From the IMG/VR virus record IMGVR_UViG_3300035183_000733, positions 1-64,000 of that record: DNA of 64,000 bases, one strand, 5' to 3'. This document shows, piece after piece, positions 46,558 through 48,747 of this stretch (the stretch's first letter is position 1; the number at the start of each line of letters is the position of its first letter). Position numbers and translations under genes: made by a program. The notes below the pieces were generated by a model that worked only from the letters and a program-made list of their open reading frames with translations, did not search any database and was not told the origin of the DNA.

Positions 46558-46626
46558 ATGAAAAACTTGATACACATACACCATATATGGCAGCTCTCAC
46601 AGGGCCCGGCGGTGTATTCTGTATAA
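46558..46626 (+). CDS. attenuator leader peptide (His/Trp/Ile-AUA, 22 aa)
   Basis: MKNLIHIHHIWQLSQGPAVYSV*; ATA CAC ATA CAC CAT ATA TGG. Confidence 0.85.
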   Translation: MKNLIHIHHIWQLSQGPAVYSV

Positions 46627-46652
46627 AGATCCATGGTTTGATTGATTATACG

Positions 46653-46691
46653 AAAATCCCCGAGGCCAGAAGTCTCGGGGATTTTTCATTT
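46653..46691 (+). terminator. attenuator terminator of the Trp/His/Ile2 tRNA operon
   Basis: AAAATCCCCGAGGC-CAGAA-GTCTCGGGGATTTT-TCATTT. Confidence 0.85.
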
Positions 46692-46762
46692 ACGGGCGTA
46701 GTTCAATGGTAGAATAGCGGTCTCCAAAACCGTTGATGGGGGTTCGAATCCCTCCACCCGTG
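46692..46762 (+). tRNA. tRNA-Trp(CCA)
   Basis: GCGGT-CT-CCA-AA-ACCGT, G73. Confidence 0.95.
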
Positions 46763-46808
46763 GGAATATTTAAGCTGATACCTCCACGTGGTATATTCTG
46801 GTAACCCT

Positions 46809-47069
46809 TTATGGGGCTAAATTCAGCTTAGTGATTAGGATATTTTTGATAATATCAAAATACTTAGCACAGTTACGTTCTTTGAAGTATTTTAATGAGG
46901 AAGTGTCTATTATGACTAATTCTATTCCGCGCTCTAAACAGGCCTGGAATTTATGATGGTCATTGTTACGTATCTGTTCCAATTTAGCTGAACCATGGAT
47001 TAGTTCATAATGGTATATGCCGTTAAGTTCGAACGCGAGTTTCATCGATGGAATATAGATGTCGAGCTC
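46809..47069 (-). pseudogene. C-terminal fragment of a PD-(D/E)XK/DUF559-like endonuclease
   Basis: ELDIYIPSMKLAFELNGIYHY; N-terminus absent. Confidence 0.55.
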
Positions 47070-47303
47070 GGCATTGTTGCCAAGTTCGTTCGCGCGATTG
47101 CGGGAGTGCTCTACTACAAAGTGGAAGTCGATGGCGGAGCGTACGAATTCCCGGTAGACATGAACGACAAGGAAGATGTCGGCACTGCTACGTTCGACGC
47201 AGAGATCAAGGCGATAACGTTGATGCGTTACATACGCAAGGCCGACGTAAACACGACTTGCCCCCGGTGTTCCCACCGTGCTGCGGGCAGTCCAAAGCAC
47301 TAA
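47064..47303 (+). pseudogene. N-terminally truncated small phage gene
   Basis: AKFVRAIAGVLYY...GTATFDAEIKAITLMRYIRKA. Confidence 0.4.
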
Positions 47304-47314
47304 CGGTGGGACAT

Positions 47315-47400
47315 GGGGATTGTAGTCGGTAAGGGATGCCGGCCGGTTTGTGGAGCCGGAATGACAAAGTCTAATGCGGGTTCGAATCCCGTCTTTCCCC
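47315..47400 (+). tRNA. tRNA-His(GTG), atypical (long variable arm, acceptor mismatches)
   Basis: CCGGT-TT-GTG-GA-GCCGG. Confidence 0.75.
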
Positions 47401-47413
47401 CAGGTTTTTTTAT

Positions 47414-47488
47414 GGTAGACGTAGCTCAATTGGTTAGAGCGCCAGATTGTGGTTCTGGAGGTTGTGAGTTCGATCCTCATCGTTTACC
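47414..47488 (+). tRNA. tRNA-His(GTG)
   Basis: G-1:C73, cloverleaf. Confidence 0.95.
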
Positions 47489-47535
47489 CAACGTTCCTCG
47501 GGCTATCGCAGCTACCGCGCTGTGTGTGGTCGCAC

Positions 47536-47629
47536 GTGAGATAGGTCAAGGCTCACAAATAGGCGGATACCGTTGGTTGGTAAGTTGCGATTGCATCAAA
47601 CGTGGGTTCGAGCCCCACTCCGCCTACCA
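47536..47629 (+). ncRNA. hairpin + D-armless tRNA-like RNA, copy 1 (CCA end)
   Basis: GTGAG-ATAGGTCAAGG-CTCAC; AGGCGGA/TCCGCCT-ACCA; T arm. Confidence 0.7.
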
Positions 47630-48016
47630 TTTTTCCGTTTTATAAATTTGCATCATGCAAGAACGGATTGCCGAGATACGAGAACTGCTCTGGATATAGG
47701 TGCAGACTCGGTCGGCGCCTCGTCCGCGGCCGGCAGTTGCCATATACCGGTGACCGGGAATATTCGGACAGAATTGGTACCGTACCAGGAGTTTCTATTC
47801 AGGAGCTGCGCGGGTGGACGCCGAGCGTGCAAGCGCCGAACTGTCGTGGCCGATGGAAACATTGAATATCTCGGGACATATTTTTCAAGGCGTGGATAAC
47901 CAACTGGCTCCGTGACTTCGACAATTTCCTCCGTAGGAAGAGAATGTGCGAAATAACGTCTATCTTCGAGAAACGATTGTGGACGCGAACAGCGTGGAGA
48001 ACGCGCAAGATATAAG

Positions 48017-48085
48017 GGCCCGTAGCTCAGTTGGTTAGGTTCAACGAGGACTGGAACGCGTTTAAGCCTCGAGTCATCCGGCCCC
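48017..48085 (+). pseudogene. degenerate tRNA
   Basis: GGGCCCG-TAGCTCAGTTGGTTAG start; no valid anticodon or T arm. Confidence 0.4.
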
Positions 48086-48103
48086 AACCGTGGTGAGGCG
48101 CAC

Positions 48104-48221
48104 GATGGATAGGTCAAGGCCATCAAATTTCGGCAGGTACCGTTGGTGTCTTATACACACTATACACGTAGCTGGTATGTTGAGATCACATCAAACGTGG
48201 GTTCGAGTCCCACCCTGCCGA
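48104..48221 (+). ncRNA. hairpin + D-armless tRNA-like RNA, copy 2
   Basis: GATGG-ATAGGTCAAGG-CCATC; CGGCAGG/CCTGCCG; same conserved linkers as copy 1. Confidence 0.7.
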
Positions 48222-48672
48222 CTTTTCTAATTCGTTCTTTTTATTTAATTTTGCCATTATGTGCAGGCTCGAAGAAATCAGATCATCGCTAATGGCTGAG
48301 GCCAGGGCCCAGGTGGACCGCATGCGTATAAACGTGAGCGTTCCTACGATGGACGGAAGGCCGACGAGCATGTCACGCAGCTGTGTATCGCGAACGAGAA
48401 GAAGTACAAGCTGAACCAGACATTCGACTCCATAGCGCTTCCGAAGCTGACGGTGGACTCGGTTGTTAACCCGTTCGCAGAGGAGGCCAAGCAGATAAAT
48501 AATGCAGCAGGAGGGCGAGTTCTTCAAGGCGTGGATACACAGCTGGCTGCGGTTTCCTTACGCGAGTCAGGAATATCCGTGCAAAAATGAAGTGGTGGAT
48601 ATATTGGCGATCTTTTGCCCTAACACAAAATGGACAGAAGCAAAAAATAAAACGCGCAGATGATTATTTACC

Positions 48673-48747
48673 GGTCCCTTAGCTCAGGTGGTTTAGAGCA
48701 AATCACTCATAATGATAAGGTCGGGGGTTCAAGTCCCTCAGGGACCA
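48673..48747 (+). tRNA. tRNA(CAT), probably Ile2 (lysidine, reads AUA)
   Basis: resembles bacterial Ile2 scaffold (GGTCCCT-TAGCTCAG...CT-CAT-AA); upstream leader uses only ATA for Ile. Confidence 0.85.

What the first reader, a model, noticed from the sequence alone, without database searches (positions are those of the whole stretch)
46558..48747. Attenuator 3: His/Trp/AUA leader, which also identifies the CAT tRNA as Ile2
SEEN: ATA CAC ATA CAC CAT ATA TGG. All three Ile codons are the rare ATA. Downstream are Trp(CCA), His x2 and, 2 kb on, a CAT tRNA with an Ile2-like scaffold. GGCCCGGCGGT (46603-46613) can pair with ATCCCCGAGGCC (one bulge, one mismatch). KNOWN: lysidine-modified CAU reads AUA. 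INFERENCE: the sensing is codon-specific rather than amino-acid-specific, and the operon spans at least 2.2 kb.
Basis: partly seen in the sequence, partly recalled or inferred. Interest (0 to 1): 0.88.

Follow-up and report, generated by a model that had tools for sequence, protein, structure and literature searches.

The report
Leader-peptide attenuator before phage tRNA genes
A huge phage places a short His/Trp/Ile-rich coding leader and a transcription stop signal directly in front of its Trp and His tRNA genes, apparently so it makes more of these tRNAs only when the cell runs short of them. Such control is well known for amino-acid genes, but I found no report of it for tRNA genes.

Summary
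At 46558-46626 a 22-codon ORF (MKNLIHIHHIWQLSQGPAVYSV) follows a conserved promoter-like motif. A -23 kcal/mol terminator hairpin (46652-46686) ends 5 nt before tRNA-Trp.

- **Paralogues.** It is one of four such units in the window. Each leader is enriched only in codons read by its own downstream tRNAs (combined p about 5e-10).
- **Structure.** Each ORF contains a segment that pairs with the terminator's 5' arm.
- **Relatives.** They keep the leader and show compensatory changes in the terminator. Leader codons change in step with tRNA content, for example 1 Pro codon and 1 Pro tRNA versus 3 and 3.
- **Distant phages.** 30% GC huge-phage contigs have the same design. In relatives the c3 unit also carries HisRS- and TrpRS-like genes, which the window has lost.

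The best reading is a trp/his/pheST-type ribosome-mediated attenuator that gives feedback control of a phage tRNA (and aaRS) module.

- ATA is the major Ile codon here (55%).
- Two of the three ATA codons are locked in the 1:2 stem, and the third is ATT in relatives.
- Ile/ATA also occurs in leaders without a CAT tRNA downstream.

The CAT tRNA does look Ile2-like, but on independent grounds. Co-transcription over 2.2 kb is plausible but unproven.

The parts
46514..46542 (+). Promoter-like block: TAcaTTTG (46514-46521), then GAAACA-N5-GATATATAA (46523-46542)
   Evidence: GAAACA-N4-16-ATATATAR occurs 6 times in the window against 0.01 expected, all on the + strand. Five precede tRNA clusters directly and one (19194) precedes a PTH2 gene that a tRNA cluster follows. 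It is conserved in L123, L139 and L140. Its role as a promoter is inferred, and the transcription start is unknown.
46558..46626 (+). Leader ORF of 22 codons plus TAA: MKNLIHIHHIWQLSQGPAVYSV
   Evidence: The peptide is identical in L123, L136 and L137 with one synonymous change. Like the other phage genes, it has no Shine-Dalgarno sequence.
46566..46590 (+). Segment 1: the regulatory codons (Ile-His-Ile-His-His-Ile-Trp at 46570-46590), which pair with segment 2
   Evidence: Minimum-energy folds. ATACACATACACC pairs with GGTGTAT..TGTAT.
46602..46628 (+). Segment 2: pairs either with segment 1 (anti-antiterminator) or, through 46603-46613, with the terminator's 5' arm (antiterminator)
   Evidence: With segment 1 masked as under a stalled ribosome, the fold gives 2:3 pairing at -19.1 kcal/mol. 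Duplex -12.3 kcal/mol, p about 0.1.
46652..46686 (+). Segments 3 and 4: intrinsic terminator hairpin (15 bp, loop CAGAA) with a T-run, ending 5 nt before the tRNA
   Evidence: -23.1 kcal/mol, z = -6.1. It is the only strong + strand terminator in 46400-48800. There is a compensatory T:A to C:G change in L123.
46691..46763 (+). tRNA-Trp (CCA)
   Evidence: ARAGORN; Rfam 66 bits.
47010..47303 (+). Conserved small protein gene (97 aa) between tRNA-Trp and tRNA-His
   Evidence: 68% identical to ORF95 of L136 by tblastn. Homologues lie at the same position in L123 and L139.
47316..47401 (+). Atypical 86-nt tRNA-His(GTG)-like gene
   Evidence: ARAGORN. Rfam gives only 30.4 bits against a threshold of 29. 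It is 97% identical to L136 together with about 60 nt of its 5' flank.
47414..47489 (+). Canonical bacterial-type tRNA-His (GTG) with encoded G-1 and C73
   Evidence: G at 47414 read.
47490..48672 (+). Degenerate interval: tRNA-like element (47561-47626), ORF179-like fragment (about 47866-47937), 5' tRNA half plus a 21-nt scrap of a HisRS-like gene (48017-48085), tRNA-like element with a UAU loop (48131-48221), and frameshifted ORF179-like pieces (48259-48663)
   Evidence: The HisRS-like and TrpRS-like genes of L136 have no tblastn match in the window, and ORF179 matches only in fragments. Rfam sub-threshold tRNA hits. Comparison with L123 and L136.
48673..48748 (+). CAT-anticodon elongator tRNA, Ile2-like (acceptor GGTCCCT/AGGGACC, T loop TTCAAGT)
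   Evidence: Orthologues in L135, L136 and L138 have compensatory changes in the anticodon and T stems and an invariant acceptor stem.
30846..31099 (+). Paralogous attenuator c1: leader 30959-31045 rich in Tyr, Asn and Gln, then a terminator, then Asn x2, Tyr x2 and Gln x3 tRNAs and a GlnRS/GluRS-type gene (32025-33587)
   Evidence: 12/27 cognate, p = 2.4e-5; antiterminator p = 0.001.
42632..42803 (+). Paralogous attenuator c2: leader 42666-42743 rich in Val, Phe and Pro, then a terminator, then Phe, Pro, Val and Val tRNAs
   Evidence: 9/24, p = 3.4e-3; p = 0.002.
52205..52373 (+). Paralogous attenuator c4: leader 52238-52318 rich in Ile and Arg, then a terminator, then Ile(GAT), Arg(ACG) and Arg(TCT) tRNAs
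   Evidence: 7/25, p = 2.6e-3; p = 0.02.

Best explanation
This is a ribosome-mediated (leader-peptide) transcription attenuator that controls a phage tRNA module.

Inferred mechanism:
1. Transcription starts at the conserved motif near 46514-46542, and the 22-codon leader is translated as it is made.
2. If charged tRNA-His or tRNA-Trp (possibly also Ile) is short, the ribosome stalls on codons 5-11 (segment 1, 46566-46590).
3. That frees segment 2 (46603-46613) to pair with the 5' arm of the terminator (46656-46667). RNA polymerase then reads on into tRNA-Trp, the 97-aa gene and the tRNA-His genes. In relatives it also reaches the HisRS-like and TrpRS-like genes, and probably everything down to the CAT tRNA.
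4. If these tRNAs are plentiful, the ribosome runs to the stop codon. If there is no translation, segment 1 pairs with segment 2. In both cases the 46652-46686 hairpin forms and transcription ends 5 nt before tRNA-Trp.

The products relieve the stall, so the loop is self-limiting. The same device, with different codons, guards three other tRNA arrays in this window and arrays in distant huge phages.

Shown: the sequence architecture, codon/anticodon matching, alternative pairings, conservation and covariation. Inferred: the transcription start, translation of the leader, and the direction and size of the response.
For: Architecture:
- Motif, then short ORF, then strong terminator, with no room for a promoter before the first tRNA, at four arrays.

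Codon matching:
- In a 4x4 test of leader codons against tRNA sets, only the diagonal is significant: 2.4e-5, 3.4e-3, 4.3e-4 and 2.6e-3. Fisher combined p is 4.6e-10.

Alternative pairings:
- Each ORF holds a near-copy of the terminator's 3' arm. Duplex against shuffled ORFs gives p = 0.001, 0.002, 0.10 and 0.02.
- c3 also has a 1:2 stem over the regulatory codons (z = -2.0), and the whole leader has z = -4.8.

Orthologues (flanking protein 75% identical at the amino-acid level):
- From 12 nt before the ATG to 18 nt past the stop codon there is 1 change, and it is synonymous.
- The terminator carries a compensatory T:A to C:G change. Both the 2:3 and 3:4 pairings are kept.

Covariation of content:
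- The L123 c2 leader gained two Pro codons, a Tyr codon and two more Phe codons. Its array has Pro x3, Tyr and Phe x2, against Pro x1 and Phe x1 in the window.
- The L140 leader has Arg and Ser codons with Arg and Ser tRNAs. The L145 leader has no Arg codons and no Arg tRNAs.

Distant 30% GC contigs L139, L140 and L145 have the same motif, leader, antiterminator and terminator before Trp/His arrays (binomial p = 0.014, 1.5e-5 for L139 and L140).

In L136 the unit carries HisRS-like and TrpRS-like genes that match the His/Trp leader.
Against: - There is no expression data. The transcription start, leader translation and terminator efficiency are unmeasured.
- The c3 antiterminator duplex alone is only marginally better than shuffles (p about 0.1).
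- The leader has no Shine-Dalgarno sequence. This is true of nearly all genes here, so it is weak evidence against.
- Only two distinct c3 orthologue sequences are available, so structural covariation for c3 rests on very few substitutions.
- In c1 the stop codon lies about 26 nt beyond segment 2. The 'ribosome at the stop covers segment 2' step therefore cannot be the only way termination is restored.
- The Rfam His_leader hit is far below threshold and is equally strong on the opposite strand.
Confidence: 0.78

Rival explanations
1. The three AUA codons make the attenuator sense the AUA-reading tRNA specifically. The CAT tRNA 2 kb downstream is therefore Ile2 (lysidine-modified) and part of the same regulated transcript.
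For: - The CAT tRNA is Ile2-like on independent grounds. It has C4-G69 and C5-G68, its T loop is identical to ileX, and its acceptor stem matches ileX at 6 of 7 pairs. Its best match in 5,426 E. coli genomes is the annotated tRNA-Ile ileX. Identity to ileX against metT is 78.9% vs 75.0%, and 82.7% vs 74.7% for the L136 orthologue.
- PMC1635315 describes C4-G69 and C5-G68 as very frequent in tRNA-Ile(CAT), and C3-G70 as usual in tRNA-Met. Here the pair is U3-A70.
- ATA makes up 3.9% of all phage codons, so an AUA reader is useful to the phage.
- There is no strong terminator between the leader and the CAT tRNA, and the order is conserved in L136.
- L140 and L145, which lack a CAT tRNA, have no Ile in their leaders.
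Against: - ATA is the majority Ile codon (55%), so three out of three has p = 0.17. Three Ile in 21 codons has p = 0.19.
- ATA codons 5 and 7 are paired in the 1:2 stem. The unpaired codon 10 is ATT in L123, L136 and L137.
- ATA at codon 7 is shared with leaders c2 and c4, whose arrays have no CAT tRNA.
- The L139 leader has 5 Ile codons (2 of them ATA) and no CAT tRNA in 6 kb downstream.
- The anticodon stem of the window's CAT tRNA resembles E. coli metT.
- L134, a close relative, has an HNH gene where the CAT tRNA sits in the window.
Confidence: 0.25
2. This is a pheST-type attenuator whose real cargo is the aminoacyl-tRNA synthetase genes (HisRS/TrpRS here, ArgRS at c4, GlnRS/GluRS at c1). 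It senses amino-acid supply, and the tRNA genes are passengers. This overlaps with the best explanation and differs only in what selection acts on.
For: - Relatives carry HisRS-like and TrpRS-like genes in the c3 unit.
- Relatives carry an ArgRS-like gene in the c4 unit.
- A PF00749 synthetase gene follows the c1 array in the window.
Against: - The window has lost HisRS and TrpRS from c3 yet keeps the attenuator almost unchanged.
- c2 has no synthetase in either genome.
- Leader codons track tRNA gains and losses for amino acids with no synthetase gene in the unit, such as Pro, Phe, Lys and Ser.
Confidence: 0.2
3. Coincidence. The hairpin is an ordinary terminator of a tiny promoter-proximal transcript or of the upstream gene. 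The short ORF is untranslated, and the tRNAs are made from another promoter or by constitutive read-through.
For: There are no expression data. The c3 antiterminator is marginal on its own. Short ORFs are abundant in any sequence.
Against: - There are four paralogues and three distant homologues with matched codons.
- Leader and array content covary.
- The leader is almost unchanged while the upstream intergenic DNA and the flanking protein (75% identical) diverge.
- Only 5 nt separate the terminator from the tRNA.
Confidence: 0.04
4. This is a translation-independent RNA switch (T-box-like) in which uncharged tRNA binds the leader RNA directly.
For: The functional logic is the same: tRNA status controls a terminator before translation-supply genes.
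Against: - An Rfam scan of 46300-48900 at E up to 1 lists no T-box match.
- The cognate codons are multiple, in one reading frame, and begin right after an ATG.
- Several amino acids are represented in each leader, which a single specifier codon cannot do.
Confidence: 0.02

Closest known systems
E. coli pheST attenuator (pheM leader peptide)
   Same: A short leader ORF rich in the cognate codon, followed by an intrinsic terminator with an alternative antiterminator, controls a gene of the translation supply chain (an aminoacyl-tRNA synthetase). This comparison rests on established knowledge and was not tested here.
   Different: Here the first and main cargo is tRNA genes. Several amino acids are sensed at once. 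The system is phage-encoded and present in multiple paralogous copies per genome.
his operon leader (hisL; Rfam RF00514) and trp operon leader
   Same: A run of His (or Trp) codons in a leader, with a four-segment 1:2 / 2:3 / 3:4 design. Stalling on segment 1 gives read-through.
   Different: There is no sequence or structure membership: 23.7 bits against a gathering score of 49, with an equal hit on the opposite strand. Only 3 His and 1 Trp codons are present. The cargo is tRNA rather than biosynthetic enzymes, so the loop closes on tRNA supply rather than on amino-acid synthesis.
Multivalent attenuators (ilvGMEDA, ilvBN, thr operon leaders)
   Same: One leader carries codons for several amino acids and integrates their charged-tRNA levels (established knowledge).
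   Different: The mix of codons here mirrors the list of tRNA genes downstream and changes with it between genomes.
T-box riboswitches
   Same: They sense tRNA status to control a terminator before synthetase and related genes.
   Different: T-boxes bind tRNA directly without translation. No T-box match is found here, and the leader is a codon-rich ORF.
tRNA-Ile2 (CAU modified to lysidine by TilS), e.g. E. coli ileX
   Same: The CAT tRNA shares C4-G69, C5-G68, the T loop and most of the acceptor stem with ileX. It is not an initiator.
   Different: It has U3-A70, and its anticodon stem resembles that of metT. The determinants are known to differ between bacterial groups (PMC1635315). The host and its TilS are unknown.

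Membership tests
Leader-peptide (ribosome-mediated) transcription attenuators | A short ORF close to the promoter and upstream of the regulated genes | tested here: met
   A 22-codon ORF at 46558-46626 begins 16 nt after the conserved motif. The arrangement is the same at c2 and c4, and c1 has a longer 5' region.
Leader-peptide (ribosome-mediated) transcription attenuators | The leader is enriched in codons that relate to the regulated products | tested here: met
   7/21 cognate codons, p = 4e-4 (4/21, p = 4e-3 without ATA). Off-diagonal comparisons are not significant. Combined over four units, p = 4.6e-10.
Leader-peptide (ribosome-mediated) transcription attenuators | An intrinsic terminator lies between the leader and the first regulated gene | tested here: met
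   A 15-bp hairpin of -23.1 kcal/mol with a T-run at 46652-46686, and the tRNA starts at 46691.
Leader-peptide (ribosome-mediated) transcription attenuators | A mutually exclusive antiterminator uses a segment that the translating ribosome can mask | tested here: inconclusive
   For c3, 2:3 pairing is predicted when segment 1 is masked (-19.1 kcal/mol). The duplex is only p about 0.1 against shuffles. It is clear for c1, c2 and c4 (p = 0.001-0.02). The pairing is preserved through substitutions in L123.
Leader-peptide (ribosome-mediated) transcription attenuators | The regulatory codons lie in a segment (1) that sequesters the antiterminator strand (2) | tested here: met
   The 1:2 stem 46566-46582 / 46611-46628 is in the minimum-energy and centroid structures, z = -2.0.
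Leader-peptide (ribosome-mediated) transcription attenuators | Read-through rises when the cognate charged tRNA is limiting | not testable with these tools
   This needs Term-seq or reporter assays.
Rfam His_leader (RF00514) | Covariance-model score at or above the gathering threshold | tested here: not met
   23.7 bits against 49, E = 0.57, with an equal hit on the opposite strand.
T-box leader | A match to the T-box covariance model (specifier loop and T-box sequence) | tested here: not met
   The Rfam scan of 46300-48900 at E up to 1 lists no T-box match.
tRNA-Ile2 (lysidine tRNA) for the CAT tRNA at 48673-48748 | CAU anticodon in an elongator-type tRNA (no 1-72 mismatch, no three G-C pairs at the base of the anticodon stem) | tested here: met
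   G1-C72, and anticodon stem AAUCA/UGAUA.
tRNA-Ile2 (lysidine tRNA) for the CAT tRNA at 48673-48748 | Acceptor-stem pairs C4-G69 and C5-G68 (E. coli TilS determinants), and absence of the Met-typical C3-G70 | tested here: met
   Acceptor stem GGTCCCT/AGGGACC, giving U3-A70, C4-G69 and C5-G68. The criteria are from PMC1635315, which also warns that they are not universal.
tRNA-Ile2 (lysidine tRNA) for the CAT tRNA at 48673-48748 | Closer overall to known Ile2 than to elongator Met | tested here: inconclusive
   78.9% to ileX against 75.0% to metT for the window copy, and 82.7% against 74.7% for the L136 orthologue. Only E. coli references were available.
tRNA-Ile2 (lysidine tRNA) for the CAT tRNA at 48673-48748 | C34 is converted to lysidine and the tRNA is charged with Ile | not testable with these tools
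   This needs mass spectrometry, a TilS assay or tRNA-seq.

The most novel reading that the evidence does not exclude
Huge phages run their tRNA/synthetase arrays as closed-loop supply modules. Each array is preceded by a multivalent leader peptide whose codons act as a table of contents for the tRNAs behind it. The phage therefore tops up exactly those tRNA species that become limiting during infection, for example after host shut-off or tRNA-cleaving defences. Sensing may work at the level of individual isoacceptors. Examples would be AUA with an AUA reader (the CAT tRNA or the conserved UAU-loop tRNA-like element), wobble-read NNU codons in the c1 leader, and TAG at codon 3 of the PTH2 gene next to the suppressor tRNA.
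Probability: 0.55. Interest if true: 0.9.

Novelty: new variant of a known kind. Interest (0 to 1): 0.82.

Why it matters
Leader-peptide attenuation is textbook for amino-acid biosynthesis and for one synthetase operon. I found no report of it in front of tRNA genes in six full-text searches.

If it works as inferred:
- It would be a direct feedback controller of tRNA supply, encoded by a virus.
- It would help explain how huge phages regulate their large tRNA complements.
- It would give a simple sequence rule for predicting which tRNAs belong to one regulated unit: leader codons match array content.
- It would offer compact, tunable tRNA-level sensors for synthetic biology.

The associated short TrpRS-like protein has more than 4,000 relatives at E up to 1e-10, some on contigs of 0.2-0.7 Mb. 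The phage group that carries such modules may therefore be large. Only three contexts from distant relatives with tRNA arrays were inspected, and two other contexts (L141, L142) showed no array or leader next to the gene.

Tried and rejected
- **Stop-codon recoding** as an explanation of the short ORFs. Making TAG, TGA or TAA a sense codon lengthens ORFs about equally, so there is no signal in this window.
- **IMG/VR scan with the promoter motif plus ATGAAR.** It gave 120 mostly unrelated hits and was too unspecific. A scan with the degenerate c3 leader pattern found only the source contig itself.
- **Single-protein locus searches.** They returned only the source contig, IMGVR_UViG_3300035183_000733.
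- **Homologues P0006 and P0008** of the upstream protein. These sit in unrelated lambda-like phages without tRNA arrays and were dropped.
- **L141 and L142** carry the short TrpRS-like gene with no tRNA array or leader beside it, so the module is not universal.
- **Rfam.** No family explains the leader, and the His_leader hit is chance-level.
- **Sigma-70 and terminator consensus scan.** It missed the attenuator terminator, probably because its T-run lies inside the stem and falls outside the scan's tail rule. It found nothing useful, so I replaced it with my own T-run and hairpin scan.
- **Supplementary alignments of PMC1635315**, wanted to classify the CAT tRNA, are not held.
- **ARAGORN in standard, intron, pseudogene and mitochondrial modes** does not consistently call the UAU-loop element a tRNA. 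Its minimum-energy fold does not show the anticodon-like hairpin, although covariation does.
- **Phage-database annotation** of CAT tRNAs is almost uniformly 'tRNA-Met' and cannot discriminate Ile2.

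
Full report
**Context**

The window is the first 64 kb of a 373,759-bp IMG/VR contig, IMGVR_UViG_3300035183_000733.
- It has about 50% GC, and genes lie mostly on the + strand.
- ARAGORN tRNA genes, and Rfam adds one more.
- It also carries a PF00749 (GlnRS/GluRS-type) synthetase, a UvrD helicase, a SET-domain protein, a PTH2 peptidyl-tRNA hydrolase and an RlaP-type RNA-repair protein.
- Genes lack Shine-Dalgarno sequences and have A-rich upstream regions. Several are preceded by TAnnTTTG. From general knowledge this resembles Bacteroidota-type expression signals, but the host is unknown.

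**The observation**

- The ORF at 46558-46626 encodes MKNLIHIHHIWQLSQGPAVYSV.
- The run ATA CAC ATA CAC CAT ATA TGG is at 46570-46590.
- A 15-bp hairpin with a T-run occupies 46652-46686 (-23.1 kcal/mol, z = -6.1). It ends 5 nt before tRNA-Trp at 46691.
- Downstream lie a 97-aa gene, an atypical 86-nt tRNA-His, a canonical tRNA-His with an encoded G-1, and a CAT tRNA at 48673-48748.

The one error is 'rare ATA'. In 18 long ORFs of this window, ATA accounts for 311 of 564 Ile codons.

**It is one of four paralogous units**

Reading the 260 nt upstream of every tRNA showed the same layout at four arrays. Each has a motif GAAACA-N-GATATATAR, then a short ORF starting MK(K/N/Q), then a strong hairpin with a T-run directly before the first tRNA. 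The motif occurs 6 times in the window, all on the + strand, against 0.01 expected.

| Unit | Leader | Downstream genes |
|---|---|---|
| c1 | MKKYNAYQQYNQNQNQ... | Asn x2, Tyr x2 and Gln x3 tRNAs, then the GlnRS/GluRS-type gene |
| c2 | MKKMINIVLVFPVFVSF... | Phe, Pro, Val, Val tRNAs |
| c3 | this finding | Trp, His, His tRNAs, and further on the CAT tRNA |
| c4 | MKQMINIVRISRRR... | Ile(GAT), Arg(ACG), Arg(TCT) tRNAs |

I tested each leader against each array's cognate codon set, using the phage's own codon usage as background. Only the four matching pairs are significant: p = 2.4e-5, 3.4e-3, 4.3e-4 and 2.6e-3. All twelve mismatched pairs give p of at least 0.23. The Fisher combined p is 4.6e-10.

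**Alternative RNA structures**

- In all four units the full leader folds with the terminator.
- Late in each ORF lies a near-copy of the terminator's 3' arm, which can pair with the 5' arm. Compared with dinucleotide-shuffled ORFs, this duplex has p = 0.001 (c1), 0.002 (c2), 0.10 (c3) and 0.02 (c4). The c3 antiterminator is therefore the weakest of the set and would not convince alone.
- c3 also has a clear 1:2 stem, in which the regulatory codons (46566-46582) pair with 46611-46628 (z = -2.0). The whole leader has z = -4.8.
- With segment 1 masked as under a stalled ribosome, and the terminator's 3' arm not yet made, the predicted structure is the 2:3 antiterminator (-19.1 kcal/mol).

This is the classical four-segment logic. 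A stall on segment 1 gives read-through. No stall, or no translation, gives termination.

**Relatives**

The upstream protein has relatives at 75-81% identity on Logan contigs.
- L123, L136 and L137 carry the identical leader peptide. From 12 nt before the ATG to 18 nt past the stop codon there is a single change, ATA to ATT at codon 10. The upstream intergenic DNA and the spacer before the hairpin diverge.
- The terminator shows a compensatory T:A to C:G change and a C to T change that keeps a G-U pair. Both changes also preserve the 2:3 pairing.
- Leader content follows array content. The L123 c2 leader (MKTMTQIVPVFPVFVPFSGSGRVMYFDDF) has three Pro codons, one Tyr and five Phe. Its array has Pro x3 (including CGG, matching the new CCG codon), Tyr, Phe x2 and Val x4. 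The window has one Pro codon and one Pro tRNA.
- c4 is conserved in L134 and L135, where the array also holds more Arg tRNAs and an ArgRS-like gene.

**The full c3 unit in L136**

The order is: leader, terminator, a Trp-like tRNA, tRNA-Trp, ORF95, two tRNA-His genes, a HisRS-like core, a 243-aa TrpRS-like gene, a tRNA-like element, ORF179, the CAT tRNA, ORF101 and the SET gene. The His/Trp leader therefore precedes His and Trp tRNAs and His and Trp synthetase-like genes.

In the window the two synthetase genes are gone. They have no tblastn match, and the 1.2 kb between tRNA-His and the CAT tRNA is debris. The debris comprises:
- two copies of the tRNA-like element;
- fragments of ORF179;
- a 5' tRNA half fused to a 21-nt scrap of the HisRS-like gene.

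**Distant relatives**

The short TrpRS-like protein has 4,247 database relatives at E up to 1e-10, some on contigs of 0.2-0.7 Mb. Of five contexts inspected, three have tRNA arrays and all three show the device.

| Locus | Leader | Downstream |
|---|---|---|
| L139 (30% GC) | MKNINKIHEHQIWHRNVSSLGICYIS, a recognisable homologue of the c3 leader | terminator, Trp-like tRNA, ORF106, tRNA-His, TrpRS |
| L140 | MLVNRSHKHFSKSSKWFSHYRSRY... | His, Phe, Lys, Trp and Ser(GCT) tRNAs, TrpRS, then Arg(GCG), Ser(TGA), Arg(TCG) |
| L145 | MLYTSKHSKHFSSSSKWF..., no Arg codons | Trp, His, Phe, Lys and three Ser tRNAs, TrpRS, no Arg tRNAs |

Each has the GAAACA...ATATATA motif or a TAnnTTTG box. L139 and L145 have clear copies of the terminator arm inside the ORF, and the L140 copy is weaker. 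L141 and L142 have the gene but no adjacent array.

**Mechanism**

I conclude with about 0.78 confidence that this is a leader-peptide attenuator. It gives negative feedback on a phage tRNA (plus synthetase) module, sensing mainly charged tRNA-His and tRNA-Trp. What is shown is sequence architecture, statistics, conservation and covariation. The transcription start, leader translation and the response itself are inferred. A plausible use is topping up specific tRNAs when the host pool falls during infection, but that part is speculation.

**The AUA / Ile2 claim**

The leader does not identify the CAT tRNA.
- Three Ile in 21 codons is not an enrichment (p = 0.19), and three ATA out of three has p = 0.17.
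- Codons 5 and 7 are base-paired in the 1:2 stem, which constrains their third base. Codon 10, in the loop, is ATT in the relatives.
- ATA at codon 7 is shared by the c2 and c4 leaders.
- L139 keeps Ile in the I-H-x-H-x-I-W core but has no CAT tRNA within 6 kb.

Independently, the CAT tRNA is Ile2-like.
- It has C4-G69 and C5-G68, lacks the Met-typical C3-G70, and has an ileX-type T loop and acceptor stem.
- Its best hit in every E. coli genome is the annotated tRNA-Ile ileX.
- The identity margin is modest: 78.9% to ileX against 75.0% to metT. For the L136 orthologue it is 82.7% against 74.7%.
- The anticodon stem looks Met-like, and PMC1635315 warns that the determinants vary between taxa.

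I put 'Ile2' at roughly 0.6-0.7, and 'the leader senses it specifically' at about 0.25.

**Operon extent**

The attenuator's own terminator is the only strong + strand terminator between 46400 and 48800. No copy of the promoter motif lies between the leader and the CAT tRNA. In L136 the genes are tightly packed, and ORF179 overlaps the CAT tRNA start by about 10 nt. Co-transcription is therefore plausible but unproven. In the close relative L134 an HNH endonuclease gene sits where the CAT tRNA is in the window.

**A lead that bears on AUA**

A conserved tRNA-like element follows the TrpRS-like gene or its remnant. It is at window 48131-48221, L136 3351-3442 and L139 6834-6917.
- It has an acceptor stem, a T arm and a 5-bp hairpin whose invariant loop CUUAUAC puts UAU in the anticodon position. 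It has no D arm.
- On four sequences, all 20 proposed pairs are standard in every sequence and 8 pairs change on both sides. Slid controls give 34-52% paired with at most one such pair.
- It occurs in the three lineages whose His/Trp leader contains ATA. It is absent from L140 and L145, whose leaders lack Ile. That amounts to only two independent lineages.
- ARAGORN does not call it a tRNA.

Whether it decodes AUA, acts as a decoy or is a processing signal is open.

**Novelty**

The mechanism class is known: the trp, his, ilv and pheST leaders. Six full-text searches found no report of leader-peptide attenuators controlling tRNA genes or phage tRNA arrays. I therefore rate it a new variant of a known kind, of high interest. 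The searched library does not cover most subscription journals.

Noticed in passing
window 48131-48221 (degenerate copy at 47561-47626); L136 3351-3442; L139 6834-6917: A conserved D-armless tRNA-like RNA. It has an acceptor stem, a T arm and a covarying 5-bp hairpin with the invariant loop CUUAUAC (UAU in the anticodon position). It always lies just after the TrpRS-like gene or its remnant. All 20 pairs are standard in every sequence and 8 show changes on both sides. ARAGORN does not call it. It could be an AUA reader, a decoy or a processing signal.
   Followed up: partly
window 19194-19621 and 20018-20041: A PTH2 peptidyl-tRNA hydrolase gene (Pfam) begins ATG AAG TAG behind the same GAAACA..GATATATAA motif. 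It lies just upstream of tRNA-Cys and a suppressor tRNA(CUA) at 19877. A second mini-ORF, ATG AAG TAG AAC AAG CCA CCG TAA, follows that tRNA. An in-frame TAG next to the TAG-reading tRNA may be a read-through switch.
   Followed up: partly
window 19877-19952 and 42187-42258: There are two tRNAs with anticodon CUA, which ARAGORN labels 'Pyl'. These are amber suppressors. A simple ORF-length test gave no clear sign of TAG recoding in this 64 kb.
   Followed up: partly
window 47490-48672 compared with L136 1947-4007: The window lineage has lost the HisRS-like and TrpRS-like genes that relatives carry in this unit. What remains is duplicated fragments of ORF179, a 5' tRNA half (48017-48038) and a 21-nt scrap of the HisRS-like gene. 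In L136 the HisRS-like core appears frameshifted near its 5' end.
   Followed up: yes
window 47253-47401; L136 1650-1798: The atypical 86-nt tRNA-His-like gene together with about 60 nt of its 5' flank is 97% identical between genomes whose neighbouring coding DNA is about 79% identical. This may be a larger structured RNA.
   Followed up: no
L134 1-520: In a close relative (SET protein 97% identical) an HNH endonuclease gene sits where the CAT tRNA is in the window. It is preceded by the 3' end of a tRNA whose acceptor strand matches the orphan 5' tRNA half at window 48017-48038. This suggests homing-endonuclease-driven turnover of tRNA genes.
   Followed up: partly
window 30959-31045 (c1 leader): The c1 leader prefers codons that the phage otherwise avoids: TAT in 3 of 3 Tyr codons (background 14%, p = 0.003) and AAT in 3 of 4 Asn codons (background 19%, p = 0.02). 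These are read by G34 tRNAs through wobble pairing. This hints at codon-level tuning of stall sensitivity.
   Followed up: partly
window 24046-24241: The same promoter-like motif stands directly before a 136-nt tRNA (Rfam 47.8 bits; GTT in the anticodon loop as read from the sequence; an insertion of about 60 nt after the anticodon arm). There is no leader ORF or terminator. ARAGORN misses this tRNA.
   Followed up: no
window 30780-30822, 31302-31390, 52461-52520: Further tRNA-like mini-elements or tRNA remnants lie beside the arrays. One at 52461-52520 has acceptor, D and T arms but no anticodon arm.
   Followed up: no
window 46301-46420: The upstream 301-aa ORF (45399-46304) is 428-429 aa in relatives. 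In the window it appears interrupted near 46300 and continues in another frame. This could be a frameshift or an assembly error.
   Followed up: no
L139-L146 (family): A short (about 240 aa) TrpRS-like protein has more than 4,000 relatives at E up to 1e-10, some on contigs of 0.2-0.7 Mb. Its neighbours often include RtcB, RNA ligase, SmpB, a tRNA methyltransferase and other tRNA-repair or tRNA-supply genes.
   Followed up: partly
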